A stretch of DNA of 64,000 bases from Octopus sinensis (GCF_006345805.1 NC_042997.1:115940001-116004000); one strand, 5' to 3'. Shown: positions 15,578 through 64,000, counted from the first letter of the stretch. The notes: generated by a model not told the origin, from the sequence alone. Made by a program: numbers and translations.

Positions 15578-15615
<38 letters not shown>

Positions 15616-15640: not shown

Positions 15641-16153
15641 AAAGGTTGAATTAAATTTCGACTTTTAATTTGGTGTGTTGTGAATTTGTGGAAAGGAATC
15701 CTATAAAAATGGAGAAGAAAAGATATTAAAATGTAAGAGAATTTTAACTCATGCAGACGATCGTTTCGAACTGCGATAGAAAAATCATACAAATTCATGA
15801 TTGAACAGAAATAATTTAATTAATTTAATTATATATCACTGTACTCGTCAGTGCAAGGAGTATAAACAACATTTTTTTTTACAAAGGACTTGACTTGATA
15901 CAGGAAATAGCAAAGTAGGATTTTGGAGATTCATATTTATCGTTATGAGACAGAAAGAAGAGTTGCGAGTCACTTCGATTGCGGCCATGCTGGGGATACT
16001 GTCATGAAGAATTTTTAATCGAATGAATTGACCCAAGAACTTTATTTTTAAGCCTTGTACTTATTCTATTGATCTGTCTGGCTGAACTGCTTAGTTACGG
16101 GGACGTAAACGTACCGATTCCGGTCGTGAAGCGGTGGTGAGACACGCACACAC

Positions 16154-16204
<51 letters not shown>

Positions 16205-16929: not shown

Positions 16930-16963
<34 letters not shown>

Positions 16964-18349
16964 TATATGTACACACACATATATGTATATATTTATACAC
17001 GATGGGCTTCGTTAGGTTTCCGTCACCAAATCCACTCACCAGACTTTGGTTGGCCCAAAATGCCATGCAGTGGGACTGAACCTGGAACCAAGTGGTTAGG
17101 AAGCAAGCTTCCTACAACACACCCTCTTTTTTTCCAGTGGCGAGAGGGGAAAAAGGCGACAAGAACAGGTCGTGAATACTACTGGAAGCCTCCAGTATTG
17201 ACCCCTGCATGCGGGAGACCCATAGAGTGATGGTCTTTTTTCACAGCCCTGCACTTGTAAATTGCTGAACGCCCGTCGCCATTCTGGCGGAATGAATCGT
17301 AAAATAAATTTCTTTACAAATGTTGTTTTAAGTAAAATTTGTTTAGTTGTGGTTTCTAATTACAAACCGCAGTCATGGTGAAGACGAAGATGAAGATGGT
17401 GGTGATGGTGATGACAGTGATGATGACGATGATGATGACTGATAATGATTTATGATGATTGATGGTGGGTGTGGTGGTGCTGCTGGTGGTGGTGGTTGTG
17501 AGGAGGGAAGCTGTGTAGAGGAGAGGTATAGGGAGAGAAAGAGGAAGCGAGCGAAGGAGCATTTCGTAAACATACTCAGTTGCGGAATGGTATTTTACCA
17601 GTTGAGCCATGTCCCGCCACTGAGTGCGTGGAAATGTCTACTCGTGTTTTTTCTCTCTTTCTCTCTCGCGCGTGAGTCTTTTAGTATGTTAGTGTGTGGG
17701 AGGCACAGAGAGACAGAACGAGAGGGAGAGGTTAGAGAGAAAGAAGCTTAGAAGGAACGAGATGTAGGTTCATTAGGGAAAGACCCTATCGCACGGTCCC
17801 TTCAGGCAGGCGTAATAGAGCAATTCATACGCAGATACAGACCCTGTACATTCAACCAACAGTCCATCCATTCAAAGAGGAAGACCCATACATGAGTTCA
17901 CTCATATCCACACACACACACATATGCGCATAGAGATTGTTACATGTAGACCATACCTGTTTACATGCATATACACATACACACACATCATCCATCCATC
18001 CGTCCACACATACATACATACAAACATACATTCATTGATGTTGAAGCGAATTACGTATTACCCACACAAATATATTCGAATACATGCAAAGATGTAGACC
18101 CATACATGCATACATATCCACACACATTCATCTATGCATGCATACATACAAGAAACCATTCATACATTCATACATACATACATGCATGCATGCATGCACA
18201 CATCCAGCCATACATACAACATAAATGCATAATACCTGTATATATCCAGCCATACATACATACATTCATCCATACATACATGCATGCATACATCCAGTCG
18301 GCCAGCCATACATACATGAATACATACATGAATATATACATGAATACAA

Positions 18350-18397
<48 letters not shown>

Positions 18398-20486: not shown

Positions 20487-20810
20487 TGAAGGCGCACAGC
20501 TTAACGGTTAAGATATTCGGCTCATGATCACAAAGCCGCGAGTTCGATACCCAGCGATGCGTCTTGTCCTTCGGCAAGACACTTAATTTCGCGTTGCTCC
20601 CGTCAGCTAGCAAGAATGAGTTGTATCTGTATTTCAAAGGGGCCAACCACATCACATTCTGTGTCACACTGAATCTCTCCGAGAACTACGTTAAAAGTAC
20701 GCTTGTCTGTGGAGTGCTCAGCCACTTGTACGTTAATCTCACGAGCAGACTGTTCCGTTGATCCGATCAGCTGGAACACTCCTCGTCATAGTCGACGGAG
20801 TGCCAGTTAT
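20487..20810 (+). mobile_element. SINE-D: tRNA-headed, CORE-like SINE group
   Basis: Head GGCGCACAGCTTAACGGTTAAG...GAGTTCGATACCC, CORE-like TCCTTCGGCAAGACACTT, body GAGAACTACGTTAA...TGGAGTGCTCAGCCACTTG. Related pieces at 6655-6800(-), 25590-25850(+), 29345-29620(-), 31205-31365(+), 31595-31860(+), 62830-63095(-). Confidence 0.7.
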
Positions 20811-20925
20811 ACCCAATTCCAAACGGATGAAAAGACAATAATCACTCGTCTTACAACAAATTATATTGAGTTGGTGCATAATTATTACGGTTTTTTTTCA
20901 ACAAATTTTATTCAGCAAAAACAAT

Positions 20926-22041: not shown

Positions 22042-22459
22042 AGGCGCAGGAGTGGCTGTGTGGTAAGTAGCTTGCTTACCAGCCACATGGTTCCGGGTTC
22101 AGTCCCACTGCGTGGCACCTTGGGCAAGTGTCTTCTACTATAGCCTCGGGCCGACCAAAGCCTTGTGAGTGGATTGGTAGACGGAAGCTGAAAGAAGTCC
22201 GTCGTATATATGTATATACATATATATATGTGTGTGTGTGTGTGAGAGAGAGAGAGATCCCCCTCCACACACACACATCGCTTGACATTCGATGCTGGTA
22301 CGGTTACGTTCCCGTAACTTAGCGATTCGGCAAAAATAATCGATAGAATAAGTACTATGCTTACAAAGAATAAGTCCTGGGGTCGATTTACTCAACTAAA
22401 GGCGGTGCTCCAACATGGCCGCAGTCAAAATGACTGAAACAAATAAAAGAATAAAAGAA
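22042..22459 (+). mobile_element. SINE-A: tRNA-derived, CORE-like SINE (full-length copy)
   Basis: Box A-like TGGCTGTGTGG, box B-like GGTTCAGTCCC, CORE-like CCTTGGGCAAGT, internal (TA)/(TG) tract, tail GGCGGTGCTCCAACATGGCCGCAGTCAAAATGACTGAAACAAATAAAAGAA. Other copies near 12120-12523(-), 15950-16215(-), 16228-16870(+, two), 16995-17120(-), 23315-23613(-), 28890-29090(+), 36225-36365(-), 41575-41725(-), 48835-49045(+), 50420-50802(-), 51015-51460(-), 54440-54575(-), 56015-56400(+), 56675-59141(-, interrupted). Confidence 0.9.
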
Positions 22460-30478: not shown

Positions 30479-31967
30479 CATATTTTCCCTCTGTATGCAT
30501 GTATGTATGTATGGATGGATGGATGGGTGGATGGGTGAATGGATGTGTGGATGGGTGAATGGATGTGTGGATGGGTGGATGTGTGTGTGTAAGATGCTGG
30601 TCAGATATGTATGCATTCGTGTGTGTGTTTGTGTATATAAAAAGTATATGAATATATTATTGTAACACATACATATATATATATATGGATGTTTCTCTCT
30701 CTGTATGTATGTACATATGCATTTTGAATTAAATTTTGGCACAAGGCCAGCAATTTCGGGGAGGAAATATCGATTACATCGACTCCATTAATCAATTAGT
30801 ACTTATTTTATCGATCCTCAAAAGGACGAAAGAGAAATTTGATTCCGGTGGCATTTGAACGTAAAGTCGGACAACATGCTATTATGCTTTTTGTCCGGCG
30901 CAGTAACGATTCTGCCAGGTTGTCGCATTATATATTGTCCGACTTTACGTTGTGGGTTCATATGCCACCGGAATAATTTTTTTCGATGCGTTTTTTCGAT
31001 GACCGAATAACTGAAGAGATGGCGGCGTGGGTTTCTGCCCCGACATCCGAAACTCGGAGTTTTATCATGGCTACCTAATAATTATCACGTATATTTACAC
31101 ATAAATTCCTCTATTTACATAATATCGAGGTCTCTTTCATTCTTTTGTTGTCTTACCATTTCTGTCAATATATAATATATATACATACGCAAAATGCATC
31201 GCACCTGTATTTCAAAGGATCAGCCTCGTCACAGTCTGTGTCACTCTGAATCTCCCTGAGAACTACGTTAAGGGTACGCGTGTCTGGAGTGCTCAGTGAT
31301 GCACGTTAATTTCACGAGCAGGCTGTTCCGTTGATCGGAGCCCTCGTCGTAACCGATGGAGTACCTAAAGATAACCTGAAAATCTAGGACAATCACCGCA
31401 ATACACCTTTGAAAAAGTTTTGATTGGAGAAATATTTAATTTGGAGCAATTATGTAAATTAGTCACATGATTTGCCAAAAGGTACACGTTTCCAGAAAAT
31501 ATAAAAAGTAGGTAAGATTAAAATTTTAAGTTCCATATCAGTTTATTTATTTAATTATGATCCTTTTTATGATCACATTTTTATATAGCTCAACCTGGAC
31601 CAAATGGCCTAGCAGTTAGGGGTGATGTACTCACGATCGCAAGACCATGGTCTCGATTTCGATACTGGGCGGTGCATTGTATTTCTCAGCAATAGACTTT
31701 ATTTCCCGTTGCTCTCATGCACTCGGCTGTGAATGAGTAACCCTGCAACGAAAGCTACCAAGGTAATATTGTGATCTCGGTTACTTATGCCCCATTAGGA
31801 ACCAGGTTACGGGTCCTATGACTCCTTAGGACTTAAGACTGTACTGGCTTTACTTTACAGTCTTAACTATCTTTTAGAAGACTTGGATGCAATAATTCCA
31901 AGTACAACAGCATTTCTGGACCATCTGAACATTGTCCGGCACATTTTAAAGTAATTTATCTAAAAAC

Positions 31968-37838: not shown

Positions 37839-38136
37839 GGCGCAATGGCCCAGTGGTTAGGGGAGCGGATTCGCGGTCGTAGGATCGCGGTTTCGATTTC
37901 CAGACCGGGCGATGTGAGTGTTTATTGAGTGAAAACACCTAAAGCTCCACGAGGCTCCGGCAGGGGATCGTGGCGATCCCTGCTGCACTCTTTCGCCACA
38001 ACTTTCTCTCACTGTTTCTTCTGTTGGCCTGCTCGCTTAGTCAGCAGGGTGGCCTCATTTGAAGGCTAAACGAATGCGAAGCGCATTGTGACCAGCGATG
38101 TGTAGCAACATCTGATAACCTGGTCGGTCACGGTGA
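37839..38136 (+). mobile_element. SINE-C second copy
   Basis: Colinear with 35515-35803 over its whole length. Confidence 0.85.
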
Positions 38137-40375: not shown

Positions 40376-40414
40376 TATATGTATATATGTATATATATAT
40401 GTATATAAATCCTT

Positions 40415-40757
40415 AAATCCTTAAAAATGGTTTAGCCCGAAGGCCGCGGCCATGCTGGGGCACCACCGCTGAATGAGCCCACCTAGTTTGTGAATCCACC
40501 TCTGATACGTGGCACTTGATCAACAAGGGATTTCGATGCTGCTGCCCGCATCCGTGTCTCCTGTCGTGAGGTAGGTGCATCTGGACTCCCAACAAGAAGA
40601 GATCCAGTTTAGTTTTAAAGAAACCCACATCCACACCATGTAAGTCTCTCAGGCATTTAGGGAGGATGTTGAAAAGCTGTGGTCCTCTGAAACCCAAGCT
40701 GTTGCAGTATCTGGACCTGTATTTTGATGGTGATGTTGGAATCCTTGGCACCACGCA
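40415..40757 (-). mobile_element. Second CR1/L2-group LINE 3' fragment
   Basis: [39 protein letters not shown]; 3' end GGTGGTGCCCCAGCATGGCCGCG...(TTAAGGAT)n. Confidence 0.75.
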
Positions 40758-41498
40758 GCGGTGTATATATGTATATATATATGTACATATGTATATATGT
40801 ATATATATATACACGCAGCGGTGTATATATGTATATATATATGTACATATGTATATATGTATATATATATATGTATATATGTATATATGTATATATATAT
40901 ATGTATGTGTGTAAGTGTGTTTGTATATGTATGTACATACATATGTATACACATATGTGAATGTATATGTGTATATATGTATGTATTTACATGTATGTAC
41001 ATATGTATGTATGTGTGTGTATATATATATATATATATACACATATGTATGTATATGTATATATATATATATATGTGTGTGTGTGTTGTGTGTGTGTATG
41101 ACACACACGCAGGTATCATATTGCAACGCAATAGGCTAATATCACTAGTCTGCTGTCAAACCCATTTTCTATCAGACGTTAAACTCTACCACTTGGCGTG
41201 TTATGCTTGCTTTTTGCTTAAATTATTTAACAACACGCGCGTGTCCAAACCTCTTTATACCCTACTTCATTAATCCACTACTCTTCCCCTTTCTCCTTGA
41301 CTCTCTCTTTCTCTCTTTGTTTCTTTTCTCTCTCTTCTTTTTCTTTCTGTCATCCATCTCTATATCTTTCATTTCACATATTTACTACGCCACTCTTTCT
41401 TTTTATCCATTTACTAAATTTTTTCTTTCTTCCTTTCTTTTCTTCTGTTTTGGAAAACAAACACAGATACATACAAACATACATATATCACACACACA

Positions 41499-48457: not shown

Positions 48458-48859
48458 GTAAGTATTTCGTTGTAATAAGTTCTACAAACCTCATTTGTTG
48501 AAATGACTATTGACGTTTTATTGGGGTTAAATATGAAGATATGTGTTAAGAGGCATATTTGTGTATTTGGTAAGACTAATCTTTGTCTTTCTCCCTTTCT
48601 CTCTCTAACAATCTATTTCATCTATCTTAAACATCTTATCTATCTACCCTACATAACCTACTACCTAACTGCCCACGTACATACACACATACACGCATAC
48701 ATACATACTTACTTACACACCTATTTACCTGTCTGTCTATCTACCTACTTTTGGTGCTGGTTCTATCAGTCATCCTCTTTTTCTTACATATATGTTGCAT
48801 GCATGCATACATACATACTCACATATAAGCACAGACGTGGTTGTGTGGTAAGAAGCTTG

Positions 48860-48920
48860 TCCATGTCCAACCCACAAGCTTCTATCTGTGTACTACCCTT
48901 GTGGCAAATTATATGAAATA
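48860..48920 (+). mobile_element. 61-bp 5'-truncated 3' end of a related retroelement inserted in a SINE-A head
   Basis: TSD AAGAAGCTTG at 48850-48859 and 48921-48930. The last 25 nt (CCCTTGTGGCAAATTATATGAAATA) match the 3' end of the 57051-59107 element at 24/25. Confidence 0.8.
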
Positions 48921-49611
48921 AAGAAGCTTGCTTCCCAACCACATGGTTCCAGGTCCAGTCCTACTGCGTGGCACCTTGGTCGAGTCGACCAAAGCCTTGT
49001 GAGTGGATTTAGCCGACGGAAACTTAAAGAAGCCCATTATATACGAAGCGGGTGCTGAAAAGTTCCTGGCTTTAAGTGTATCACGAAAGGCCTGATTGGG
49101 GGCCCAAAATTTCAAGTTCTTTTACAAGATGGGCTACAGTAAATATTCTGCTCAATAACACAGATTTTTTGTCATTTATTTGGTCTTAAACCATTTGAGC
49201 ATATCTCTTAGTGGCTGACGATATGTGCATCTCTGATCACATGTAGGAGTAGTGGGAGAATATCATGCCATCTTTTGAAAAGAATTCTTTGGAGTTTAAA
49301 TAATTCATTTCCGGAAACGTGGGTATTCCGTTCAACATCCTTAAATAATTATTATTCAGGGATCTTTTCAGTGAGATGGGCTACTCGACCTGAAGAAAAT
49401 TCTAATTGGGTCCCATCTACAAGGTCATGTGCTGTTTATCTTGACACGAGATCACCATGTCGTGCACGTATGATTGCGATGTACGTGCTTGGTATATTCA
49501 TCAGACGGGTAGTCATGATCAGTATACTGGGCTTCGTATATTTGTATCCCAGTGTCACTTTGATGGCATGCACTGCTCTTTCACTCAACAACAACAACAA
49601 CAACAATAATA

Positions 49612-49925
49612 AGAATGATAGCAAAAGGGGCTGATTCCTACCTAGCTCAGATCCCAGGAAACCCCAAAATGGCAGAAATTCAAAAGATAGTGCACATGAG
49701 GACTACCCATATCCTACGTAAGATACTGCCTATGAAATCTCAAAATTTAAAACAAACTTAATTTTCTTATGATTTCTTAAACATTCTCTAGAAAAATACT
49801 TTGTGCAAAACGAAATATATGACAACCTAGGCAAAACACCAACTTGAACTTATAACTTGTTGTCTCTTGAGGTCTCTGGGTGAGACTTGGAGTCAACTTG
49901 TACAAATACAAAGCAAAAGTCAAAC

Positions 49926-49994
<69 letters not shown>

Positions 49995-50010
49995 CAACAA
50001 CAGCAACAAT
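49612..50010 (+). mobile_element. R4/Dong-type LINE extreme 3' end with (TAA)n tail
   Basis: GADSYLAQIPGNPKMAEIQKIVHMRTTHILRKIL (RLE C-terminal motif), then UTR ...GAGGTCTCTGGGTGAGACTTGGA... and (AAT)n. A shorter piece of the same UTR is at about 61480-61575. Confidence 0.65.
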
Positions 50011-50044
50011 CGTTATAATAATAATTTTGCTTTTAATATTTCAG

Positions 50045-50142
50045 AGTTGTCGAAGTGTTGAACAATATAACAACAGGGAACAGGAAACGAAATCATCACA
50101 GACCAAGTTCTCTCTCCTTAAAATTATTCAAAGAAGACAAAG
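50045..50142 (+). CDS. TBX1: Tbx1 post-T-box exon (98 bp, phase 2-1); not annotated in this frame in the ORF track
   Basis: tttaatatttcAG|A...AAAG|GTatat. Encodes (S)VVEVLNNITTGNRKRNHHRPSSLSLKLFKEDK. Phases match both neighbours, and RNHHRPSSL resembles the RNHRPGAL segment I recall in vertebrate TBX1. Confidence 0.8.
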
Positions 50143-50419
50143 GTATATATTCTAATTATACATGAGGCGAAAGAAAAAATTATCTCATTGTGTGTTTGTC
50201 CTGCTGGGCGTGTCTTGTTTCGCTTGAGTTAATTGAGTGACAGTTGATTATTATAATTAATGCCAACATATATATAATGAGAATATGTTCATTACGTTGT
50301 TGTTCTTTAATCTGTTATTGGTTGCAAAGCAGAGGGACAGCGGTGACAATGCTCTCCGAATCATGACTATGTCGTCAATATGATTCCATCTCGCACTCAT
50401 GGTTTTGGTGATTAGTTAA

Positions 50420-50802
50420 TCTTTTACTTGTTTCAGTCATTTGGCCATGCTAGAGCACCGCTTTAGTCGAGTAAATCGACCCCAGAACTTATTCTTTGTA
50501 AGCCTAGTACTTATTCTATCGGTCTCTTTTGCCGAACCGCTAAGTTACGGGACGTAAACACACCAGCATCGATTGTCAAGCGATGTTGGGGGGACAAACA
50601 CAAACACACAAACATATACACACACACACACACATACATATATACGACGGGCTTCTTTCTGTTTTCGTCTACCAAATCTACTCACAAGGCTTTGGTCGGC
50701 CCGAGGCTATAGTAGAAGACACTTGCCCAAGGTGCCACAAAGTGGGACTGAACCCGGAACCATGTGGTTGGTAAGCAAGCTACTTACCACACAGCCACTC
50801 CT
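50420..50802 (-). mobile_element. SINE-A copy in the last Tbx1 intron
   Basis: Near-identical to the 12120-12523 copy. Confidence 0.9.
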
Positions 50803-51132
50803 AGTTCTCAACCATTTTTTACCTATGACCTCCTTTCATTACTACTTTACTCTGGTCGACCCTCATTGTCATTCAATGTATAAAAACTAATTTTAAAGGC
50901 GCTTCTTTCAAAATTGCGATTTTGTTTTTCACATAGTTGTCGGAGGTTGAACTATGTAAAACGCAAGAGAAAGAAACCCAGCAGCTTCTTGCAATAAACA
51001 CATCTTTCATCTTTTGTCTCTTGCTTGTTTCAGTCATTGGACTGTGGCCATGCTGGGGCACCGCCTTGAAGAATTTTTAGTCGAATGAACTGATCCCAGT
51101 ACAACTTAGTTTTAAAGCCTGGCACTTATTCT

Positions 51133-51364
51133 TATTTCTTTACTACCCACACGGGGCTAAACACAGGGGGGAAAACAAGGACATACAAAGGGATTAAGTC
51201 GATTACATCGACCCCAGTGCGTAACTGGTACTTAATTTATCGACCCCGAAAGGATGAAAGGCAAAGTCGACCTCGGCGGAATTTGAACTCAGAACGTAAC
51301 AGCAGACGAAATACCGCTAAGCATTTCCCCCGGCGTGCTAACGTTTCTGCCAGCTCGCCGCCTT
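51133..51364 (-). mobile_element. SINE-B (tRNA-like head, long-tail variant) nested in a SINE-A
   Basis: Sense AAGGCGGCGAGCTGGCAGAAACGTTAGC...GAGTTCAAATTCC (B box)...GGTCGACTTTGCCTTTCATCCTTTCGGGGTCGAT...GTAGTAAAGAAATA. Apparent TSD AAGCCTGG(C/T)ACTTATTCT at 51115-51132 and 51377-51394. Other copies near 690-860(-), 905-1080(-), 19145-19720(+, three), 30730-30930(-), 36880-37110(-), 38275-38420(+), 38865-39040(+), 43780-43890(+), 55383-55600(+), 59160-59290(+), 61580-62420(-, several). Confidence 0.88.
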
Positions 51365-52209
51365 GGTACTTAGAATAAGCCTGGTACTTATTCTATCGGT
51401 CTCTCTTATCGAACCGCTATTTTACGGGGACGTAAACGCACCAACACTGGTTTCCTAAGATTTTATATTTCAGGCGATTCATGAATTTCTTTATTTACAT
51501 CATTTGATGTTGCTCCAGCAGAGGCAGAACCGTTGTATTTTATATTAACTAAATAAGCAGCAACATATTTTTTTGTATAACTCGTGTAACAATTCTGGAT
51601 ACTTTGAAAGTAAATAATTTAAACTTTGGCTATCAGCATTTTGTAGAAACCAAAGTGACATAAAAAAAGTCTTAAAATAAAGCTTTTTAAATCCTTCCAC
51701 AAAAACATGTGAAATTCTCTCGTAGTAATTATTGTAGTCTTGTGTGTTCTAAGCCAACATGCACTTTTAAGTGGGGAGAATTTTTACCTTTTAGTATTAA
51801 CACTACCTTTGTTGCTTTAATCATTTTTTGATGAGCTCACTGGCTTTTATTGACACCAGTGACAGCTTGGGCTCTGTGCGTCTATGCATGTCACTAGCTG
51901 TATGCTTACGGCAATTTATAGCAGTTGGGTAGCTTCCATTGACGTGGTCAAAGAAGGTCGACACCTCGTGATCATGGCAGATCTAGGTAGCGGGGATGAC
52001 CGTGATTGTCTCCTGCTAGCGGTGTAAACAACAGTGTTCATATACATCACAAAACCATGCATAGTAAATCTCGAGTATTGCGTGTTCCAAGATGGCTTCC
52101 ACTTTTTAAGTAGTGATAAATTTTACATTTTGCTTTTAATACTGCTTCTGTCGCTTTAATTATTTTTTAACTTCTATTTATAGCAATTCTATTTTATTTC
52201 TATTTTCAG

Positions 52210-52526
52210 ACTATCTCGAAAAAGATCCTAGTAATGCACAGTTGTCACGTGTCATAAGTCCAAATTTACCAGGAGGAATAAATTTGCCACTTTCTCGTGG
52301 TGTGGAGCCGCCACGAACCCCACAAGGATACTCGGATGGTTACAGCTACAATCCTTACAGTCCAGCCTCGTATATGCAGCCAGCCAAAGTCAGACCAAGT
52401 CCTTATGCTCGAGAAATGGATTATGCTTCATACCACTCGCGGGTCAAAGGCTTTTACTCGCGTGCAAACACATTCAGGACACAAATGCGTGATCCAATGA
52501 CGTGGAGTACACAGCCAATGACGTGA
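52210..52526 (+). CDS. TBX1: Tbx1 terminal coding exon
   Basis: tttctattttcAG|AC. The phase-1 entry gives (D)YLEKDPSNAQLSRVISPNLPGGINLPLSRG...YMQPAKVRPSPYAREMDY...PMTWSTQPMT* (TGA 52524-52526). KVRPSPY resembles the C-terminal KSRPAPY motif of vertebrate TBX1C. Confidence 0.85.
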
Positions 52527-52569
52527 AGTACACATCTAATGACGTGGAGTACACAGCTGATGATGTGAG
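52494..52569 (+). repeat. 21-bp tandem repeat spanning the Tbx1 stop codon
   Basis: CCAATGACGTGGAGTACACAG / CCAATGACGTGAAGTACACAT / CTAATGACGTGGAGTACACAG / CTGATGATGTGAG. Confidence 0.9.
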
Positions 52570-52604
52570 CGAGATGGTTCTTTTTTATCACTCACAAGTC
52601 ATAG

Positions 52605-52679
<75 letters not shown>

Positions 52680-52776
52680 AGGAAAAAAGAAACATAATTA
52701 TGATGCTTCATTTTTTTTCTTTTTCATCTTTGCCGCTATATTATGTTTTCGTCAGTAATTTTTTTTATAGATCTTC

Positions 52777-52910
52777 AATAAAAAACATACAAAACAATTT
52801 CCAACATACAATGCAGCAACAGCTATAAAGATATACATACATACAGTGTTTTCAACTCTCTCAGTTACAGTCAGAGATTTTTTTTTCGGTGGTACATAGA
52901 CTGCAATAAA
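52777..52910 (+). other. Candidate Tbx1 polyadenylation signals
   Basis: AATAAA at 52777-52782 and 52905-52910 downstream of the stop. The sequence is AT-rich, so specificity is low. Confidence 0.3.
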
Positions 52911-53740
52911 ACGAAAATATTCTGCACTTAAAACGTTAACTATGTGACTAAGAAGACGTTTCTTTCATAGTTAACTTACAATAGAAGAGAGAATACGAAT
53001 GGCTTCCACACACATTGCAAACATCGTTCTCAAACTCATTTACAAATCAATACGTATATTTCATAACAATAATAATAACAATAATAATGAACAATAAAAC
53101 AATGACAATAAAACACTGGACGAAATTAATCACCGAATCTAAGCCATTTAATGAGTGTGGGGTAACTTCAACGAGAGATTTACTATCTAGAGCATTGCAA
53201 GGAAAAAGTTTGAATGAGTTGAGGATGTTGTGCAAGGAACATTAAAAAGATAATGAAACGTAAATGAACTATAAGGTTATTTTCAAATTAATATAGTGTT
53301 GAAAAATGATGTCTTCAGAGTGACCTTCTTTGAAACCATTTAATATAGAAACAACTAAACAACAAAAAGATAGCTGAAAGACAAATATGATAAAAGTTTA
53401 AAGAACCACCGACAGACATATTTTGCGAGTTATGGTTGCAATGTTGCGTTTTACATTATACTTTTATCATTATTTTTATTTTATTTCATTTTTTTATAGA
53501 TATTTCTTTTTAAACATTGTATTTTTTTGTCTTTTGTAACCGCATCTTCAACACTTAACTGAAAATCACCGAGACGCTTACATTAAATCGCTGAAATGAA
53601 TAAAAAAACATTATTATAAAGTCACGGAAATAATTAATACACATGAAACTTTCAAAATACAAGGAAACTTCATTTATTTATTGGTTGTACTACATCATAT
53701 TTACTAAATCAACACTTCTTAGATTTGATGCCTGGTTTAT

Positions 53741-53782
<42 letters not shown>

Positions 53783-54779
53783 TAGGTATGAATGGATGTA
53801 TATACATGATGAAAGCGAGTGTGTGTGTGTGTGTGCGTGTATGCATAAATGTATGTATATTTCATATGCAAAAGAGGCTTTTCTTTAACAAACTCGAACA
53901 GCACTCTATCAACACCATTACAAATTTCAGCCTCAGCAGAAAATATCAGAAATGATTCTTTGCCGAGAAATTATGGAATGTGTTGTTATCAACAAGAAGT
54001 GAAAGAAATAAAGAATTTATTCTTAATTCTACTTTATTTTAATTTTATTATTATTTGTTGTTAATTTTTCTTTCATCATTTTTCTTGTCACATTTTCTGG
54101 CTTTTAAATCACCCTCATCGTCATCTGTATATCATTTTAATGTCCGCTTTTCAATGCTTGCATCGTGTTCAAACAGAATTCATTGATGCAGATTTTCTGC
54201 GATCAGATGTCCTTCCCGTCGTCAACCCTCACACGTTTCCAAACAAGGCATAATGTTCCACATAACCAGACATGCTTTTACAGGACATTGATATTGAATT
54301 ACAACATGTGTCATTACGTTTGTTTACAACCACCATGGTGTCAGGGCAAAGAAGCGTGCACATGCATGCACACACAATATATATATAAACACACATATAA
54401 TATATGTATATATATATATACACCCACACACACCTGACAGGGTTCTTTCATTTTGTTTGTCACAGCTATCCATAACACTTTTGTCAGCCGTAGCTATAGT
54501 TAAGAAGGCCTGGCCCAAGTTGCTACGCAGTGGAACTAAACCTGAAGCATTGTGGTTGGGAAGCTTACTATACAGTTAAGATATAAAATATACTTACATA
54601 AACATTTTAATAAATGAAATATTTATAAAATGTATATAATATCCATATAATATAATATAATATAATATAATATAATGTATATATATATATATTTAATACT
54701 CTGCTCTATTTATTTATGCTCATTTACAGCTGTGTTCACATCTCAATATGGTTGGCTCTCTTAAGAATTGTGGGTGGGT

Positions 54780-55330
54780 GATTTGTATATAATGCTGTCG
54801 AATTTGGTAAAGATCACTGCTCTTGTATTTGCAAAATTTGCAGATTCTTAAGGATTGTGCATATGGGGGTTCTTTTCAGCTATATTTAAGTTGCATATTT
54901 TGATCTCGTAAATGACCGTCATTGCATGAGGATCTTTCTTTTGATGTCAAAATCTGTTACATGTTCTTTCAAATTCCTGATGTGTTCAGACAATGTTGTA
55001 TCCCTCATTTCTGCATATCTGAAGGAAGAAGCATAATTAAAGTAATGTTTAAATTTGATCATATATACGAGGTATGTATTTACCTAATCTTTGTGAATTT
55101 TTTTCAGTTTTACATTCTTTACATATTGGTTTACATTTAAGGTTTTTTAATGTTGTGATTGCAGCTACAACTTAATTCTAAGGTGCTTCTGTTAAATAGT
55201 TTCCGACTGCTGCGGTTAATCGCCTTCAACATGTGTTCATATATAGAGGACTGATCATACAACTGGAGTTATTTTTTGTGGGATCTATGTGAAGTTGACC
55301 ACATTTAAGCTAGTTTACACATTTTGAAGT
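54780..55330 (-). mobile_element. Degraded Penelope-like GIY-YIG endonuclease region
   Basis: Remnant FKHYFNYASSFRYAEMRDTTLSEHIRNLKEHVTDFDIKRKIL...CNLNIAEK resembles the SSF..T.LSKHIW.LK..IKWKIL..C.LC..EK pattern of Penelope endonuclease C-termini; contains stops. Confidence 0.5.
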
Positions 55331-56014
55331 TTTGCTAAATATTATTAGTTCATCTTTGACTATTATTATTATTATTATTATGAAGGCGGCGAGCTGGCAG
55401 AAACGTTGGCACGCCGGGCGAAATGCTTAGCGATATTTCGTCTGCCGCTACGTTCTGAGTTCAAATTCTACCGGGGTCGACTTTGCCTTTCATCCTTTTG
55501 GGGTCGATGAAATAAGTACCAGTTACGCACTGAGGTCGTTGTAATCGACTAACCCCCTCCCCCATAAAATTTTTCGAGGCCTTGTGCTTAGAGTAGAAAT
55601 AATAATAATAATTATTATTATTATCGTCATCATCATCGTCATCATTTAACGCCCATCTCTCGAGCTGGCAAGTGTTCAATGGTTTGACCGGAGCTGGCAA
55701 ACCAGAGGACTACGCCAAGCTCCACTACCTTCTTTGGCAAGGTTTTTTTTTTTTAATGGCTGGATGCCCTTCTTAGCACCGGCCACTTTAGAGAGTGGAT
55801 TAGGTTCTTTTAAAATTTTTGTAGCGACAGTCAATTAGCAAATATTTATCTATTAAAACTTGAAAGTTTTAGCAATATTTGATTTACGGGACGCAAGCTA
55901 CAGAATGTTACAGTGCATTGGACAGCAACGTGTTGGTGATAAAATAAACCTTGGATCAACTAGCTTCTCATATTATAATGGAGAGGAGTGCCATACCAAA
56001 AATTTCTTTATTCA

Positions 56015-56400
56015 TGACTCTGTGGTAAGAAGTTTGCTTCTCAACCACATAGTTCCTGGTTCAGTCCCACTGCGTGGCACCTTAGGCAAATGTCTTCTAC
56101 TATGGCCTCCGACCGACTAAAGCCTTGTGAATGGTTGACGGAGACTGAAAGAATTCCGTCATATATATATATGTATATATATGTATGTGTCTGTGTCTGT
56201 GTTCGTCTTCCATCACCGCTTAACAACCGCTGTTGGTATATCTACGGCCTCATAACTTATTGGTTCGACAAAAAGAATCCGATAGAATAAGTATCTGGCT
56301 TTAAAAAATTACTACCGGGGTCAATTCGGTCGTCTAAAATTCTTCAAGGCGGTGGTCCATTATGGCCTCAGTCAAATGATTGACACAAGTAAAGAATAAA
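56015..56400 (+). mobile_element. SINE-A copy (diverged)
   Basis: Head TGTGGTAAGAAGTTTGCTTCTCAACCACATAGTTCCTGGTTCAGTCCC through tail ACAAGTAAAGAATAAA. Confidence 0.85.
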
Positions 56401-57050
56401 TACAAGTTTAACAGACGGTAGATTATTTAACTAATGTTATTAATCAAGTTTTTGAAAGTATGAGCAGAATGCAGAAGTCTGTATTAATGTATGTGGGCAT
56501 TTCTATGACTTTTCTATAAGATTGTATTTGTTAAATTTAGTAGAAAACTACCCAGCCAAAAGAATCTATAACCACTGTAATCTGGACAGTGTCATCTGAT
56601 ATTTTTTTAGAAATCAAATAGAATCTTTATTGAAAAGCAGAGTGGTTCCAGGTTCCATAATGATATACTCTTACTCTTATACTCTTATACTTGTTTCAGT
56701 CATTTGACTGCGGCCATGCTGGAGCACCGCCTTTAGTCGAGCAAATCGACCCCGGGACTTATTCTTTGTAAGCCCAGTACTTATTCTATCGGTCTCTTTT
56801 GCCGAACCGCTAAGTAACGGGGACATAAGCACACCAGCATCGGTTGTCAAGCAATGCTAGGGGGACAAACACAAACACACACACACACATACATATATAT
56901 ACATATATACGACAGGCTTCTTTCAGTTTCCGTCTACCAAATCCACTCACAAGGCATTGGTCGGCCCGGGGCTATAGCAGAAGACACTTGCCCAAGATGC
57001 CACGCAGTAGGACTGAACCCGGAACCATGTGGTTGGTTAGCAAGCTACTT

Positions 57051-59107
57051 TATTTCATCTAATTTGCCACAAGGGCAGCACAAAGAGTAGTTACGGGCTG
57101 GACAAGGACATTAATGGATGATGGTGGTGATTGATGAATATGGTGATGGGAGAAGTCAGAAAGCGCCCGCCGACTTTTGCTTCTCTAAAACAATGTTCTT
57201 TTTTTCCAATATTTTACAAAATTTCAAAAATTACAAAAATTTCAAAAAATTCCAAAAAATTTTCACAAAAATTTCAATTAACAATTTACACTTTTAAAAG
57301 TCTCTTCAGAGGCAATAAACCTCTGTCACAATGTAACACAATTACAATTTTACGTTACCTGACCGATGAACTCTCTTGCTTTAATGACGCAATCGTCCAT
57401 CGTCAGGCTTCCGCATACAGGTATGACTTGCAAGAGATCCTCCGGGAAAGAATTCTCGATCCTGCACATATCATTTTCGAGTAGGACCTCCGCAGCCAGC
57501 TGCGAAGGCCACACGGGATACTCCATGCAGGACCGAAGTCCCTCCCATTCGTTTCTCTTCCTCCTCTTACGTATTTCATTTTCTATAGTGCCTCCTTTAT
57601 GGAAGAGGACTACATAGAATTTCTCCGGCATCACAATCGCCGGAGGACACATGGGAGACGCCCTCTGGGTGTTACAGTCCGCTGGTGGCGTCCCGTTCCT
57701 CTTTTTCTTTTTCTTTTTACGCTGGGCCTCGGGAGGTTGAGGATCCGGTGCTATACGCACCGGGTCCTCTTTTTCTTCCACAGCCTCCGGTTCCTTTTGT
57801 GGGTCGCCATTGCTCCCCACTCTTCTTTTTCTTTTGGAGGAGGATTTTTCCCCCTCCTCACTTTGTTTCTCTCCCTCCATTGGTGGGGCAGGGAGAGGCT
57901 CTGATATTAACTTCTCCAGGATCCTACTCTGGTTCCTGGGGCAGTTTTTCTTAATGTGGCCGGTCTCCGAACACAGGTGACACTTGGGGCGCGTCCCTCA
58001 AGCATCACCGGATACTTGGACCCGGCCATCTTCAGGAAGTCCGGCAAAACCAGACTCTTGGCCGACTGGGTCCACAGAGTCAAAGTAGCCTTTCCTCCTT
58101 CCCAGTTAGCCGCAGGCTGCATTCTCACGTTTAGGATCTTGGCGCTACCACCACTCAGACCCCGGCGGATGGAATCTTCCACCCACTCGGGCTCAAAGCC
58201 GGGCGGCAGGCCGCAGACCCATAAACGTATAAATTTTTCCCCCTTATAGCTTGGGAGAAACAGAATCTCTTCGCCCTCAATGGGCTTACTCGCGAAATCG
58301 CAAGCTGCTTTAGGAGAGTCAAACAGCAACCAAATCGTTGCGTATTTGGCTCCCCGTTGAATATGTTTAACGGCTGGCATATAGTCTGCCAGCTCGTTCA
58401 TAATTGTGTCTTTCGGAAAGACCATTATGGTGTCGAGAGACTTCGAATATGTCCTCAGCACCACTGTCTTTTCCTCAAGTTCGTTCAAATATTTTTTGGG
58501 AGGTGTTAATTCCCACACTGTGTAATTCCTTGCCATAACGTAAGAAAAACGTAAGAAAAACAGTTCAAAATGTTACAAAATGAATTAGACACAGAAAGGA
58601 GAATGAAAAAAGCAACAGAAGGGAAGAAATAAAATTAAAATGGCAGTTCAAAGAAAGTTTTTTACAAATGAATGATAGGCAGAGAAAGAGAGTTCAAATT
58701 CAGACAAGGAATTAATTTTTCTTTTTTTTTGTTCACTTTTTCGGCCAACAATTGTATTCCAAGCCAAGTATATGGTTGGTACAACACCTTGGTAAATAAT
58801 CCTTGGTAAATCCGTAGATAACACAACGACAATTTCAAAGATAATTTTTGTAGATTGACTACGCCGCCTCAAAAACACAATTTTCTTCACACCCGACAAC
58901 AGGCAGAAAAATTATATCCGGAGCAAAGTGGAGCCTTATTATCTGCTAAAAAATATTTAATGCTAAAATACATTAATGCAAGTAATAAAACTTCACTTCG
59001 CTCGCAAAAATACAAAATTCCTACCTTTAGTCGAGTCGAAAGTTCAAAAATTCACGTTGAAACAACGTCAATCGGAGCAGCAAAATAACACGTCCGAACA
59101 GTTCAGA
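57051..59107 (-). mobile_element. ORF1-only (non-autonomous) Tx1/L1-like non-LTR retroelement inserted in a SINE head
   Basis: Flanked by direct repeats GGTTAGCAAGCTACTT (57035-57050) and GGTTAGCAAAGCTACTT (59108-59124) that interrupt an otherwise continuous SINE-A. About 570 bp 5' UTR, one ORF, about 300 bp 3' region; no RT or endonuclease ORF. Confidence 0.85.
57350..58536 (-). pseudogene. ORF1p (RRM-like region + CCHC zinc knuckle + acidic/basic low-complexity linker), about 395 aa with one frameshift
   Basis: Track ORFs 57907-58536 and 57350-57880 join through a -1 shift near 57992, restoring EGR(R)PK-CHLCSETGHIKKNC (CX2CX4HX4C) and reading open to the stop at 57350. IRLWVCGLPP and LPDFLKMAGSKYPVMLEGR match the layout of Tx1/L1-type ORF1 proteins. 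Confidence 0.8.
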
Positions 59108-59627
59108 GGTTAGCAAAGCTACTTACCACACAGCCACTCCTGTGTCATATATTTATAAAACTTTCCAAATTACGCCGAGGTCGAATTTACTTTCCGGGGT
59201 TGATAAAATAAGTACCAGTTGTGCACTGGGGTCGATATAATCAACTTACCCCTCGCCTGGATTTGCTAGATTTGTGCCAAAATTTGGAACCAATATTTTT
59301 TAACCGCGTAATGCCTTTTATTGTAATGCCTTTATGTACTGTTGTTATTCTATTGCTTGTGGTATGTTGAATTCTTAGTAATACTGTTATTCGATGGCAG
59401 ATTTTCTAACCAATTGATAGATCTGTCTTGGGAGGATCATTACGCCAATGATAAAAATACACGCACTGATTCGATTTCGCTTCTTCATTGTTAGTCAATC
59501 GGTTAAATATATAACCGACTAACTCATCGATCATTTGTTAGTTTAATGAGCTGGTTAAAAAAATCAATCGGTTGTTTGGCAATATAGTTTTCATTACGAA
59601 TTGCGACTTTTTCAGTGACCTGTCATC

Positions 59628-61486: not shown

Positions 61487-61775
61487 TTTCTTATGGCTTC
61501 TTAAACATTCTCTAGAACAACACTTTGTACAAAGCCAAATATAGAGCACCCTAGGCATAACACCAACATGAACTTCTAATTTCAAATTTTGGCACAAGGC
61601 CAGCAAGTTCAAGGGAGGTGGATAGTCGATTACGTCGTCCCCATTACTCAAATTTGTACTTATTTTATCGAACCCGAAAGGATGAAAATTCAAAATCGAC
61701 CATGCAGGAATTCGTGTTCGGAACATAAAGCAATTTTCCCGGTGTGCTAACGACTCCGCCAACACGCTGCGACAC

Positions 61776-61806
<31 letters not shown>

Positions 61807-64000
61807 AATAGTGGTTTCAAATTTTGCCACAAGGGCAGCAATTTTGGGGGAAGGATGAGTCAATTACATTGATCCTCAGTATTGCACTGGTACTTAAGTT
61901 ATCGACCCCGAAAGGATGAAATGATAAATTCGATATCGGCGAAGTTTGAACTCAGAACGGGCGAAATACTACTAAGCGTTTCGCCTGGCATGCTAACGAT
62001 TCCGCCAGCTCGCCGCCTTCGTATAATAATGATGATAATAATAATTTCTACTCTAAGCACAAGGCCTTGAAATTTTGGGGGGAAGGGGGCTGGTCTATTA
62101 TAGTGACCCCGGTGCGTAACTGGTACTTATTTACCCGACTCTGAAAGGATGAAAGGCAAAGTTGAAGTCTGCGGAATTTGAACTCAGAATGTAGCGGCAG
62201 ACGATATATCTATTTCTTTACTACCTACAAGGGGCTAAGCACAGAGAGGACAAACAAGTACAGACAAACCGATTAAGTCGATTATATCGACACCAGTGCG
62301 TAACTGGTACTTATTTAATCGACCCCGAAAGGATGAAAGGCAAAGTCGACCTGGGCGGAATTTGAACTCAGAACGTAACGGCAGACGAAACACCGTTAAG
62401 CATTTCGCCCGGCGTGCCATTTAATAATAATAATTATTATATTTAGGTCTGCCGTTAAAAACTGTTGTTCGGCCGCTGATTCGACTAATTTCATCCTCCT
62501 TCTGTCATACGTACGTGCATAAATACATGAAGACATACATGCACGCACGGTGGGTTCTCCTATCGCACACGACATGTGAGGCTTCCTTAACATAGTATGT
62601 TCATTTCGATCTTGTGCCAAGACAAGTTTACAGCAACTGAAGATCGTACTGAGCTCTCAGCACGCTCAGTTACAAAGAGGGTTTCTACATGAGCTCACTC
62701 TCGCCACCAAGTCGACATTGCATATACGGGTGCACTGTGTGCCAGACGGCAGATGCCAAAGTGATTGCAAACCAAATTGAGAATATTAACCTTCATACAT
62801 ACAACGTGAATGGGAAATAAAATAAAGTAAAATAAAATGCTGGTAATCCGTCGGTTACGACGACGAGCGTTTCAGTTAACCCAATCAACGGAACAGCCTG
62901 CTCGTGAACCTGACATTCAAATGGCTGAGTACTCCACAGACACGTGTACCCTTTGCATAGTTTTCAAGGAGATTCAGTGTGACACAGAATATGACAAGGC
63001 TGGCTCTTTGAATTTCAGGTACGACTCATTTTTGCCAGGTGAGTGCAATGGTGCAATGTGAAATAAAGTGTCTCGCTCTAGGACACAACGCACCTTCGCG
63101 CGTAAACGCATACGTACGTTTGTATGTGTGTGTGTGTGTGAAAGAGACTTTTTAGGGCGAAACACAAGCTAAAACTAAAGGAATATAAAGAACATTAGTT
63201 TACGACACTACCTCTTTCTATAGAATGCCACAAGGAAACTAAGACAGTAACCACGGAAGCATTATCAACAGCAAAATACGAGGCAAAAAAATCCAACACA
63301 TTGCTGTATCGCATGTGGAAAATAAGCAGATATTAACAGTGAAACAGTTGTAAATACGATAGTAGCGATTTGTATCAGTAACAATATCATTGACGAATGG
63401 CAACCGTGAATATTTGACGGAATTAATAGTAAATTTATTGGGTTATTTCTGAAAACTTAATCTAAATAACCTGAAAGTGTAGCCTGTGTTGAGTCTGTAG
63501 GAAAAGATAATTGCTCATCTGCGACTCATTGAAAAGTGAAGGAAATTGAAATACGATGATTACTTAATGCACTTTATGCACAATTTTAGAGACTTAATAC
63601 ACAACACTCTCACTCTTCACCTTACCCTTTTTTCTCTTTCCTTTTTCTCTCGCTCTTCGCTTTTCCCTTCAACTTATCGCGTGGAAGTGTTACAGATGGG
63701 CTAAGTAATAGAGGAAAAGAACTTAAAAGAAAAACCATTACACATTTCACTCACCGCCATTTCTCTCTCGCACCCTTCCTCTCATTCCATCTCTTCGCCT
63801 CCATTCCCCCCCTTCCTCCTCTCCTCCTCCTCCTCCTCCTCAGCTGATCACTCGGAAGCGTTACTGACGGCCTAAGTAACAGGGTGACAAAACACAATTA
63901 TAAGATGCTGTTTATTATATAACACGGCAACAACATGCTACAATCATTACTTCGTAGAAAGATGAGACCGCGAAACTTTCCAAACGCATACGAACATAGG

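What the first reader, a model, noticed from the sequence alone, without database searches (positions are those of the whole stretch)
48835..59141. SINE-targeting, sequence-specific retrotransposon system: two independent insertions at the same nucleotide of a SINE's tRNA-like head
Seen: the empty SINE-A head reads GGAGTGGCTGTGTGGT^AAGTAGCTTGCTTACC (e.g. 22049-22080). Two copies in this window carry an insertion whose 3' junction is exactly at ^. One is the 2,057-bp element 57051-59107 with a 16-bp TSD; both TSD copies share the private variant GGTTAG instead of the consensus GGTAAG, so they come from one duplicated site. The other is a 61-bp fragment 48860-48920 with a 10-bp TSD. Both inserts end ...CCCTTGTGGCAAATTA(G/T)ATGAAATA, lack a poly(A) tail and are co-oriented with the SINE. 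A fixed 3' junction with variable 5' truncation and TSD length is the signature of target-primed reverse transcription by a sequence-specific endonuclease. Known: Tx1-clade elements often target multicopy sequences (tRNA arrays, U2, 5S, microsatellites, the Tx1D DNA transposon). Inference: this family uses an abundant SINE, cut between Pol III boxes A and B, as a self-renewing landing site. I am not aware of this being described in cephalopods.
Basis: partly seen in the sequence, partly recalled or inferred. Interest (0 to 1): 0.9.

Follow-up and report, generated by a model that had tools for sequence, protein, structure and literature searches.

The report
Octopus retrotransposon that targets a SINE
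An octopus family of LINE-derived retrotransposons that carry only the first LINE gene inserts at one exact nucleotide of an abundant short repeat (a SINE). This adds a new target class to a known behaviour of Tx1-type elements rather than revealing a new kind of system.

Summary
Two SINE-A copies in the window carry inserts whose 3' ends (...CCCTTGTGGCAAATTA[G/T]ATGAAATA, no poly(A)) abut the same SINE nucleotide (GGT^AAG). One insert is 2,057 bp with a 16/17-bp TSD, the other 61 bp with a 10-bp TSD, and both share the SINE's orientation.

I found two more copies of the family in Octopus sinensis, on two chromosomes and with different flanks. Each has a full-length 5' end joined to a SINE-A head 15 nt past the same site. 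Their 3' ends are lost.

The 2,057-bp element consists of a 5'UTR, an ORF1 (two RRMs plus a CCHC knuckle) and a 3'UTR. It has no ORF2, so it cannot move on its own. ORF1 evolved under purifying selection between copies (dN/dS 0.2-0.28).

Distant octopod relatives are complete LINEs whose ORF2 has an AP-endonuclease, a reverse transcriptase and a zinc finger, and best matches human L1 ORF2p. They share the 3' motif GCCCTTGTGG..AAT. One sits inside an (ATT)n microsatellite and others form tandem arrays.

Best reading: a Tx1/L1-type target-specific family with a SINE as landing site. Not shown: a genome-wide census, the autonomous partner, and an RT phylogeny. It is a new member of a known kind, of moderate interest.

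The parts
59108..59146 (-). Head of host SINE-A copy A (SINE positions 1-38). It includes the upstream TSD copy at 59108-59124 (AAGTAGCTTTGCTAACC in SINE orientation).
57051..59107 (-). 2,057-bp ORF1-only non-autonomous LINE derivative, full length at its 5' end and co-oriented with the SINE.
58537..59107 (-). 5' UTR of the element (about 570 nt).
57350..58536 (-). ORF1, about 395 codons, with one frameshift near 57985-57990. It has two RRM folds, a CCHC knuckle (CHLCSETGHIKKNC), a K/E-rich linker and a C-terminal domain of about 95 aa.
57051..57349 (-). 3' UTR. It holds a TTTTTGAAATTTTTG-type low-complexity block shared with the O. vulgaris autonomous LINE, and the terminal motif TGCTGCCCTTGTGGCAAATTAGATGAAATA (57051-57080). 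There is no poly(A).
56895..57050 (-). Remainder of host SINE-A copy A. It begins with the downstream TSD copy at 57035-57050.
48828..48859 (+). Head of host SINE-A copy B, with the upstream TSD copy at 48850-48859 (AAGAAGCTTG).
48860..48920 (+). 61-bp 5'-truncated copy of the same family (3' terminus only). It ends CCCTTGTGGCAAATTATATGAAATA.
48921..49043 (+). Remainder of host SINE-A copy B, with the downstream TSD copy at 48921-48930.
22043..22215 (+). Reference empty SINE-A copy. The target site is GGT^AAG at 22064/22065.

Best explanation
A long-lived octopus family of non-LTR retrotransposons integrates by target-primed reverse transcription (TPRT) at one defined site in the head of the abundant SINE-A repeat.

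Proposed steps, all inferred from the junctions:
1. An endonuclease/reverse transcriptase supplied in trans by an autonomous L1/Tx1-type LINE nicks the SINE's bottom strand opposite GGT^AAG. This lies just after the box-A-like motif.
2. The freed 3'-OH primes cDNA synthesis directly on the element's non-polyadenylated 3' end (...GCCCUUGUGGCAAAUUAGAUGAAAUA).
3. That 3' end carries the clade's conserved 3' motif, the presumed recognition signal.
4. The top strand is cut about 15-16 nt downstream for full-length copies. This gives SINE-internal TSDs.
5. Abortive synthesis gives 5'-truncated copies such as the 61-bp one, which has a 10-nt TSD.

The family members seen here encode only ORF1 (a tandem-RRM + CCHC RNA-binding protein), which is kept under purifying selection. 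In that respect they behave like 'half-LINE' parasites of an autonomous partner.

Shown: the junctions, TSDs, orientation, ORF1 fold and selection, and the LINE nature of the relatives. Inferred: the nick position, the trans-acting partner, and that specificity resides in its endonuclease.
For: 1. Two 3' junctions lie at the identical SINE nucleotide but have different TSD lengths (16/17 and 10 bp) and different insert lengths (2,057 and 61 bp). They are therefore independent events.

2. An independent test was positive. The only close ORF1 homologues in the protein databases are two O. sinensis loci. L001 is on CM016886.1 and L007 on CM016865.1. Their upstream flanks differ and the elements are 72% identical in DNA. 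In each, a co-oriented SINE-A head ends at AAG(T/A)AG(C/T)TTGCTTCC and is followed directly by homologous 5'UTR starts. All 4 known copies are therefore in the site, all in the same orientation.

3. In about 280 kb of other octopus DNA fetched, 9 SINE-A heads are intact, and 5 empty sites lie in the window. The head is not generally broken there.

4. ORF1 is a LINE ORF1. Its core is predicted at pLDDT 89 as a tandem RRM, with the best structural matches being two-RRM proteins. It also has a CCHC knuckle. Homologues sit immediately upstream of an ORF2 with Exo_endo_phos + RVT_1 + zf-RVT. That ORF2 matches human L1 ORF2p best, at 2e-71.

5. These relatives share the 3'-terminal motif GCCCTTGTGG..AAT and the 3'UTR low-complexity block.

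6. Relatives behave like target-specific LINEs. One has (ATT)n abutting both ends. There are head-to-tail arrays with a 5.28-kb period. An Argonauta copy has a clean 15-bp TSD.

7. dN/dS is 0.21-0.28 with dS 0.7-1.3 between the three ORF1 copies. The lineages diverged long ago while keeping both ORF1 function and the SINE-A site.

8. O. vulgaris is reported to hold 13 recently active L1-Tx1 families (PMC13282606). Type I ORF1 in animals is typical of Tx1 (PMC5203782).
Against: - Only four copies are known, and only two 3' junctions.
- The two window copies were the reason the window was flagged, so they are not an unbiased sample.
- In both O. sinensis copies the element breaks off, at a CA-rich repeat in L001 and at (GT)n in L007. 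No 3' terminus or SINE-A remainder lies within 10-29 kb downstream. Those loci therefore confirm only the 5' junction.
- No autonomous partner with this exact tail was found.
- An abundant second SINE ('SINE-B') shares 18 nt of the tail motif yet is dispersed. A shared partner would therefore not by itself explain the specificity.
- The 3' hairpin is not supported by folding statistics (z from +0.4 to -2.5).
- Tx1 clade membership has not been tested by RT phylogeny.
Confidence: 0.75

Rival explanations
1. Targeting is guided by homology rather than by the endonuclease. Copies already sitting in SINE-A give read-through transcripts that carry downstream SINE-A sequence. This sequence anneals to nicks made by a weakly specific LINE endonuclease in any of the thousands of SINE-A copies and fixes the 3' junction. 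ORF1p might also contribute to targeting. The outcome is the same SINE-specific family, but the determinant differs.
For: The tail motif is shared with the dispersed SINE-B family (18 identical nt). This suggests a common, not SINE-A-specific, partner. The family keeps its own ORF1 under selection. Co-transcription with the target is said to strengthen target-specific integration in R2-type elements (discussed in PMC4494074).
Against: No read-through transcript is in evidence. Relatives with other targets ((ATT)n, the unique site in Argonauta) have different junction sequences, as expected if each lineage's endonuclease differs. The consistent second-strand cut at +15/16 in three full-length copies also points to a protein that reads the site.
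Confidence: 0.15
2. This is a composite unit rather than repeated targeting. A single ancient insertion created a 'SINE-A head + element' chimera, or a SINE-A subfamily with a 61-bp insert. That chimera was then copied around as a unit, for example from a transcript starting in the SINE head.
For: Both O. sinensis copies have the head and element but lack the SINE remainder, and both end in microsatellite-like sequence. Composite and dimeric SINE arrangements do occur in this genome.
Against: In the window both inserts are flanked by SINE-internal TSDs of different lengths, and each host SINE is complete once the insert is removed. The 61-bp copy has no element 5' end yet still has the head upstream. 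A unit model cannot produce 10-, 15- and 16-nt duplications from one event. The SINE heads of the four copies differ from each other in the way independent SINE copies do.
Confidence: 0.08
3. Coincidence or a general fragile spot. SINE-A's head is simply a frequent breakpoint or insertion hotspot for unrelated elements.
For: A third SINE-A head in the window (6795-6813, minus strand) is broken 3 nt from the same site and fused to an unrelated 5'-truncated repeat.
Against: All four copies of one family are in one site and one orientation, across two species. The junction pattern is expected 0 times by chance. Fourteen other SINE-A heads are intact.
Confidence: 0.02

Closest known systems
Tx1L in Tx1D (Xenopus) and other transposon-targeting Tx1-clade LINEs: Tx1-Mar in Mariner-N4_AMi, Tx1-9_AMi in Harbinger, and Tx1-8_Crp/Tx1-4_AMi in LTR elements (PMC4494074)
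   Same: These are APE-type LINEs that integrate at one defined position and orientation inside another interspersed repeat. They lack a poly(A) tail, make TSDs of target sequence and tend to form tandem arrays. ORF1 is of the RRM/CCHC type.
   Different: The target here is a SINE, cut in its Pol III promoter region. I did not find that target class in the papers read. The copies seen lack ORF2. Clade placement by RT phylogeny has not been done.
Small-RNA-gene and microsatellite targeting Tx1 families: Keno (U2), Mutsu (5S), Dewa (tRNA-Leu spacer), Kibi/Koshi ((TC)n/(TTC)n) (PMC4494074, PMC3706591)
   Same: They use multicopy, dispensable sequences as safe landing sites. One octopus relative (L002) is likewise embedded in (ATT)n.
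   Different: Those targets are host genes or simple repeats, whose copy number is not driven by retrotransposition. SINE-A is itself a mobile element.
HAL1 ('half-L1') and other internally deleted non-autonomous LINEs (Bao and Jurka 2010, as cited in PMC4494074)
   Same: The element retains a 5'UTR, a selected ORF1 and the LINE 3' end, but no ORF2. It therefore depends on a partner's ORF2 protein.
   Different: HAL1 is not target-specific and ends in poly(A). Here the family is site-specific and has no poly(A) tail.
SINEU-3 / Tx1-Mar pair in crocodilians (PMC4494074)
   Same: A non-autonomous retroposon inherits the target preference of its Tx1 partner.
   Different: SINEU-3 is a short non-coding element. 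Here the dependent element codes for ORF1, and its partner has not been identified.
Dada DNA transposons (PMC3706591) and Dictyostelium TRE elements (the latter from my own knowledge)
   Same: They exploit tRNA-type Pol III templates as integration landmarks.
   Different: Dada is a cut-and-paste DNA transposon. TRE elements integrate at a distance from tRNA genes through Pol III factors, not at a fixed internal nucleotide.

Membership tests
Target-specific non-LTR retrotransposon (TPRT signature) | Independent copies share the same 3' junction nucleotide in the target. | tested here: met
   Both 3' junctions available are at GGT^AAG.
Target-specific non-LTR retrotransposon (TPRT signature) | Variable 5' truncation and target-site duplications made of target sequence. 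| tested here: met
   Inserts of 2,057 and 61 bp, with TSDs of 16/17 and 10 bp. The implied duplication is 15 bp in L001 and L007.
Target-specific non-LTR retrotransposon (TPRT signature) | Fixed orientation relative to the target. | tested here: met
   All 4 copies are co-oriented with SINE-A.
Target-specific non-LTR retrotransposon (TPRT signature) | The large majority of genomic copies lie in the target. | not testable with these tools
   No octopus assembly can be searched by DNA. All 4 retrievable copies are in the target. Two metagenome scans found nothing.
Tx1 clade (L1 group) LINE | ORF2 with an N-terminal AP-endonuclease, a reverse transcriptase and a C-terminal zinc knuckle. | tested here: not met
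   The window element has no ORF2 at all, so it can only be a non-autonomous derivative. Its distant ORF1/3'UTR relatives do have Exo_endo_phos + RVT_1 + zf-RVT, with human L1 ORF2p as the best solved match.
Tx1 clade (L1 group) LINE | The RT domain groups with Tx1 reference elements in a phylogeny. | not tested
   No Tx1/L1 reference RT set was on hand. The indirect support is by elimination. Among the LINE groups reported as recently active in O. vulgaris (RTE, Dong-R4, CR1, L1-Tx1, Hero, R2; PMC13282606), only L1-Tx1 fits APE + RT + zf-RVT with an RRM/CCHC ORF1.
Tx1 clade (L1 group) LINE | Type I ORF1p (RRM(s) + CCHC knuckle). | tested here: met
   The tandem RRM model has pLDDT 89 and matches two-RRM proteins. 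zf-CCHC scores E=0.001, just under Pfam's cut-off in the window copy, and passes it in three homologues and falls just below it in another.
ORF1-only ('half-LINE', HAL1-like) non-autonomous LINE | ORF1 is maintained by selection and ORF2 is absent across the family. | tested here: met
   dN/dS is 0.21-0.28. The window copy runs from the ORF1 stop straight into the 3'UTR. L007 shows the same ORF1-end/3'UTR-start junction. L001 is truncated too early to tell.
ORF1-only ('half-LINE', HAL1-like) non-autonomous LINE | Shares its 3' end with an identified autonomous partner. | tested here: inconclusive
   Only motif-level similarity (GCCCTTGTGG..AAT plus the low-complexity block) to autonomous LINEs of O. 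vulgaris, O. sinensis and Argonauta. No partner with the same tail was found.
tRNA-derived SINE (identity of the target) | The head is recognisable as tRNA, with box A and box B. | tested here: inconclusive
   Reading the sequence directly shows box-A-like TGGCTGTGTGG and box-B-like GGTTCAGTCCC on either side of the site. ARAGORN and Rfam find no tRNA.

The most novel reading that the evidence does not exclude
Octopods harbour an old lineage of L1/Tx1-type retrotransposons whose integration machinery reads a specific sequence in the promoter region of a high-copy SINE. One retroelement family would then use another, still-amplifying retroelement family as its dedicated and expanding safe harbour. 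The lineage would persist as ORF1-only elements, and their conserved ORF1 protein may itself take part in target choice.
Probability: 0.55. Interest if true: 0.6.

Novelty: new member of a known kind. Interest (0 to 1): 0.5.

Why it matters
Site-specific LINEs are the natural models for programmable, RNA-templated gene insertion. They are also models for how mobile elements avoid harming their hosts.

A family whose landing site is a SINE would add a target class. The number of target sites would grow with the activity of another retroelement. Each insertion would also split that SINE's box A from its box B, presumably disabling it.

It would also give cephalopod genomics, where SINEs and LINEs each make up more than 10% of the genome (PMC13282606), a defined example of nested, directional element-on-element parasitism. 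And it would provide a new endonuclease/target pair to characterise.

Tried and rejected
- ARAGORN and Rfam on the window and on a SINE-A copy found no tRNA or other family. 'tRNA-like' therefore rests on motifs only.
- The first profile search with full-length ORF1 homologues was swamped by K/E-rich low-complexity words and returned 2 proteins. Repeating it with trimmed cores worked.
- An exact look-up of the window's 209-aa ORF found no record. The source species of the window was therefore not identified.
- Two metagenome scans for the tail and for the filled junction found nothing.
- Folding of five 3' tails gave a small GCC-CUUGU-GGC hairpin, with or without an outer U/A stem, that recurs but is not better than shuffles in most cases. 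I do not claim a proven structure.
- Loci L004 and L005 (O. vulgaris ORF1-like genes without ORF2 or the tail motif) and L008 (a 932-bp Logan contig) gave nothing on targeting.
- Cluster look-ups gave no source names that tie the ORF1 superfamily to Xenopus Tx1.
- I searched 10-29 kb downstream in L001 and L007 for the missing 3' ends and SINE remainders, with relaxed patterns. None was found.
Full report
**1. What is in the window**

The window is octopus-type DNA, dense in repeats. The reference copy is at 22043-22215.

Five copies have an uninterrupted head reading GTGTGGTAAG(T/A)AGCTTGCTT.CCAACCAC. Two copies are interrupted.

- **Copy A (minus strand).** The head is at 59108-59146, a 2,057-bp insert at 57051-59107, and the SINE remainder at 56895-57050.
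- **Copy B (plus strand).** The head is at 48828-48859, a 61-bp insert at 48860-48920, and the remainder at 48921-49043.

When each host's two halves are aligned to other SINE-A copies, they overlap. The overlap is AAGTAGCTT(T)GCTAACC in A (16/17 nt) and AAGAAGCTTG in B (10 nt). Both overlaps start at the same SINE nucleotide, after GGT.

The 61-bp insert is 81% identical to the last 60 nt of the long one. Both inserts end ...CCCTTGTGGCAAATTA(G/T)ATGAAATA without an A-tail. The 37-nt filled-junction pattern occurs exactly twice and is not expected by chance.

There is one small correction. The GCTAACC variant shared by A's two TSD copies also occurs in an O. vulgaris SINE-A copy, so it is a subfamily variant, not a private one.

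**2. What the insert is**

In SINE orientation the 2,057-bp element has three parts:
- a 5'UTR of about 570 nt;
- one reading frame of about 395 codons with a single frameshift (58536 to 57350);
- a 3'UTR of about 300 nt.

There is no endonuclease or reverse transcriptase.

The protein has a CCHC knuckle (Pfam zf-CCHC, E=0.001, just below the cut-off). Its first 205 residues, modelled with an alignment of 24 homologues, fold with pLDDT 89 into two RRM-like domains. The best structural matches are two-RRM proteins such as NONO/SFPQ, Hrp1, U2AF65 and IMP3. This is the 'Type I' LINE ORF1 architecture, which in animals is associated with the Tx1 clade (PMC5203782).

**3. Relatives elsewhere**

The large protein database holds one close homologue. 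It is O. sinensis LOC115225585, at 58% identity.

An exhaustive profile search added 84 remote ones at 20-30% identity. The named ones among the leading hits are all octopod: O. bimaculoides, O. sinensis, O. vulgaris and Argonauta hians. Their genomic loci show what this protein family is.

- **L003 (O. vulgaris).** The ORF1 homologue is followed at once by a 1,132-aa ORF2 with Exo_endo_phos, RVT_1 and zf-RVT domains. Its best solved relative is human L1 ORF2p, at 2e-71 across endonuclease and RT. The units are arranged head to tail with a 5.28-kb period.
- **L010 (O. sinensis).** This locus holds a similar array.
- **L002 (O. sinensis).** Here a LINE with a decayed ORF2 has (ATT)n abutting both its 5' and 3' ends.
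- **L006 (Argonauta).** This LINE has ORF1 plus ORF2 and a clean 15-bp TSD, CTTCAACTTATGTTT.

All of these end in the same motif as the window element...G/CCCCTTGTGG(C/G).AAT..., 13-20 nt from the terminus. L003 also shares the TTTTTGAAATTTTTG block in the 3'UTR.

The window element is therefore an ORF2-less derivative of an octopod L1/Tx1-type LINE clade.

**4. An independent test of SINE targeting**

The two loci that carry close ORF1 homologues were found through protein similarity alone. They lie on different O. sinensis chromosomes and have unrelated upstream flanks. The two elements are 72% identical in DNA.

- **L001.** The sequence GGCTGAGGCATGGCTGTGTGGTAAGTAGCTTGCTTCC runs straight into the element's 5'UTR.
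- **L007.** The sequence GGCGCAGGCGTTGCCGTGTGGTAAGAAGTTTGCTTCC does the same.

The two 5'UTR starts are homologous. Both copies are therefore full length, joined to a co-oriented SINE-A head 15 nt past the same site. Copy A's junction is at +16.

So all four known copies are in the site and in the same orientation. Nine SINE-A heads elsewhere in the fetched loci and five in the window are intact.

The three ORF1 copies differ by dS 0.7-1.3 but have dN/dS of 0.21-0.28. The lineages separated long ago, kept ORF1 functional, and kept the target. L007 passes from the ORF1 end into the same 3'UTR start as the window copy, without an ORF2. The ORF1-only structure therefore seems to be a family trait rather than a one-off deletion.

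**5. Weak points**

- Both O. sinensis copies break off, at a CA-rich tract in L001 and at (GT)n in L007. No 3' terminus or SINE-A remainder follows within 10-29 kb. They support only the 5' junction.
- I could not search an octopus genome by DNA, so there is no census.
- No autonomous element with this exact tail was found.
- A second abundant SINE ('SINE-B', at least 15 copies in the window) ends in TGCTGCCCTTGTGGCAAA..., identical over 18 nt to the element's tail, yet it is dispersed. If both use one partner, something besides that partner's endonuclease must set the specificity.
- The small 3' hairpin recurs, and its third stem pair switches between G-C and C-G. It is still not statistically better than shuffled sequence.
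- The SINE head is 'tRNA-like' only by box A/B motifs.

**6. Mechanism**

The best-supported account is TPRT by a sequence-reading AP-endonuclease/RT supplied in trans.
1. A bottom-strand nick is made opposite GGT^AAG.
2. cDNA synthesis is primed directly on the non-polyadenylated 3' end, which carries the clade motif.
3. The second strand is cut about 15-16 nt downstream.
4. Occasional abortive synthesis gives 5'-truncated copies.

The junctions, TSDs, orientation and protein identities are shown. The nick, the partner and the seat of specificity are inferred.

The rivals are:
- homology-guided targeting through read-through RNA or ORF1p, which gives the same phenomenon with a different determinant;
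- spread of a composite head-plus-element unit, which the different SINE-internal TSDs argue against;
- a general fragile spot, which the intact heads argue against.

**7. Comparison with what is known**

Tx1-clade LINEs are known to target piggyBac (Tx1D), Mariner, Harbinger and LTR elements, microsatellites, U2, U5 and 5S genes, and a tRNA-Leu spacer (PMC4494074, PMC3706591). ORF1-only 'half-L1' elements are also known (cited in PMC4494074).

O. vulgaris is reported to have 13 recently active L1-Tx1 families, and that paper says nothing about target choice (PMC13282606). In the papers I searched I found no LINE family described as specific for a SINE, and none in cephalopods.

The finding is therefore a new member of a known kind. 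It has a new target class (a SINE, cut within its promoter region) and combines site specificity with an ORF1-only structure. It is real and worth a genome-wide follow-up, but it is not a new principle.

Noticed in passing
window 6795-6813 (minus strand), continuing to about 6640: A 19-22-nt SINE-A head (GGAGTGGCTGTGTGGTAAG) is fused to a 5'-truncated copy of an unrelated repeat, whose other copies are at 20681-20803, 31258-31339 and 62847-62965. The break is 3 nt past the same site. No SINE-A remainder follows. This could be a template-switch chimera or a rearranged insertion.
   Followed up: partly
window 61800-61990 (minus strand); also L006 6462-6541 and 9058-9137: A second, abundant SINE ('SINE-B', at least 15 copies in the window) ends in TGCTGCCCTTGTGGCAAAATTTGAAACCACTATT. 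It shares 18 nt with the tail of the ORF1-only element and carries the 3' motif of the LINE clade. Argonauta copies have the matching Argonauta LINE tail. This LINE clade is probably SINE-B's partner.
   Followed up: partly
window 61580-62413 (minus strand) and 19182-19662 (plus strand); L010 about 626-700; L011 about 37900-37992 (minus strand): SINE-B copies occur in head-to-tail runs. In three separate loci a tail ...CCCCTTGT(G/A)GGTAGTAAAGAAATAG(G) abuts the same internal position of the next SINE-B head (TAT(T/A)TCGTCTGCC...). This is either a dimeric SINE family or a second case of site-specific insertion into a SINE head.
   Followed up: no
L003 4445-19200 (O. vulgaris OX597840.1); L010 about 4600-20850 (O. 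sinensis CM016867.1): Head-to-tail arrays of full-length LINEs (ORF1 + ORF2) with a period of about 5.28 kb. Units are 96-97.5% identical, and only about 8 nt (CACTGATA) separate one 3' end from the next 5' end in L003. The array's right end lies in an assembly gap, so the target is unknown.
   Followed up: partly
L002 9727-9778 and 15349-15380 (O. sinensis CM016872.1): A related LINE (ORF1 9965-11812, decayed ORF2 to 15113) has (ATT)n directly at both ends. It looks like a microsatellite-targeting member of the clade.
   Followed up: partly
L006 about 9795-15245 (Argonauta hians BAAFZT010000045.1): A LINE of the same clade with an intact ORF1 (527 aa), ORF2 split into two long frames, and a clean 15-bp TSD (CTTCAACTTATGTTT). 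The clade predates the Octopus/Argonauta split.
   Followed up: yes
window 40413-41126 (minus strand): The end of this otherwise microsatellite-driven ORF reads ...[43 protein letters not shown]. It resembles the C-terminal tail of a LINE ORF2 of another clade. This was not tested.
   Followed up: no
window 22216-22400; L003 19300-19640; L002 8860-9470: SINE-A copies are usually bordered by (TA)n/(CA)n tracts. They are often followed by a second conserved module (...CCCGTAACTTAGCGGTTCGGCAAAAGAGACCGATAGAATAAGTAC...), so the mobile unit may be longer than 173 bp.
   Followed up: no
L004 9420-9790 and 11700-11780 (O. vulgaris OX597815.1): An ORF1-like gene (P0009) without ORF2 or the clade's tail motif lies between repeated segments (GGGACTGTTACATTAAGTTG...), including an inverted pair upstream. 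It may have been captured by, or nested in, another element.
   Followed up: no
protein P0002: A 1,434-aa database protein made of about 25 tandem 56-aa repeats, each matching the knuckle-plus-linker part of ORF1.
   Followed up: no
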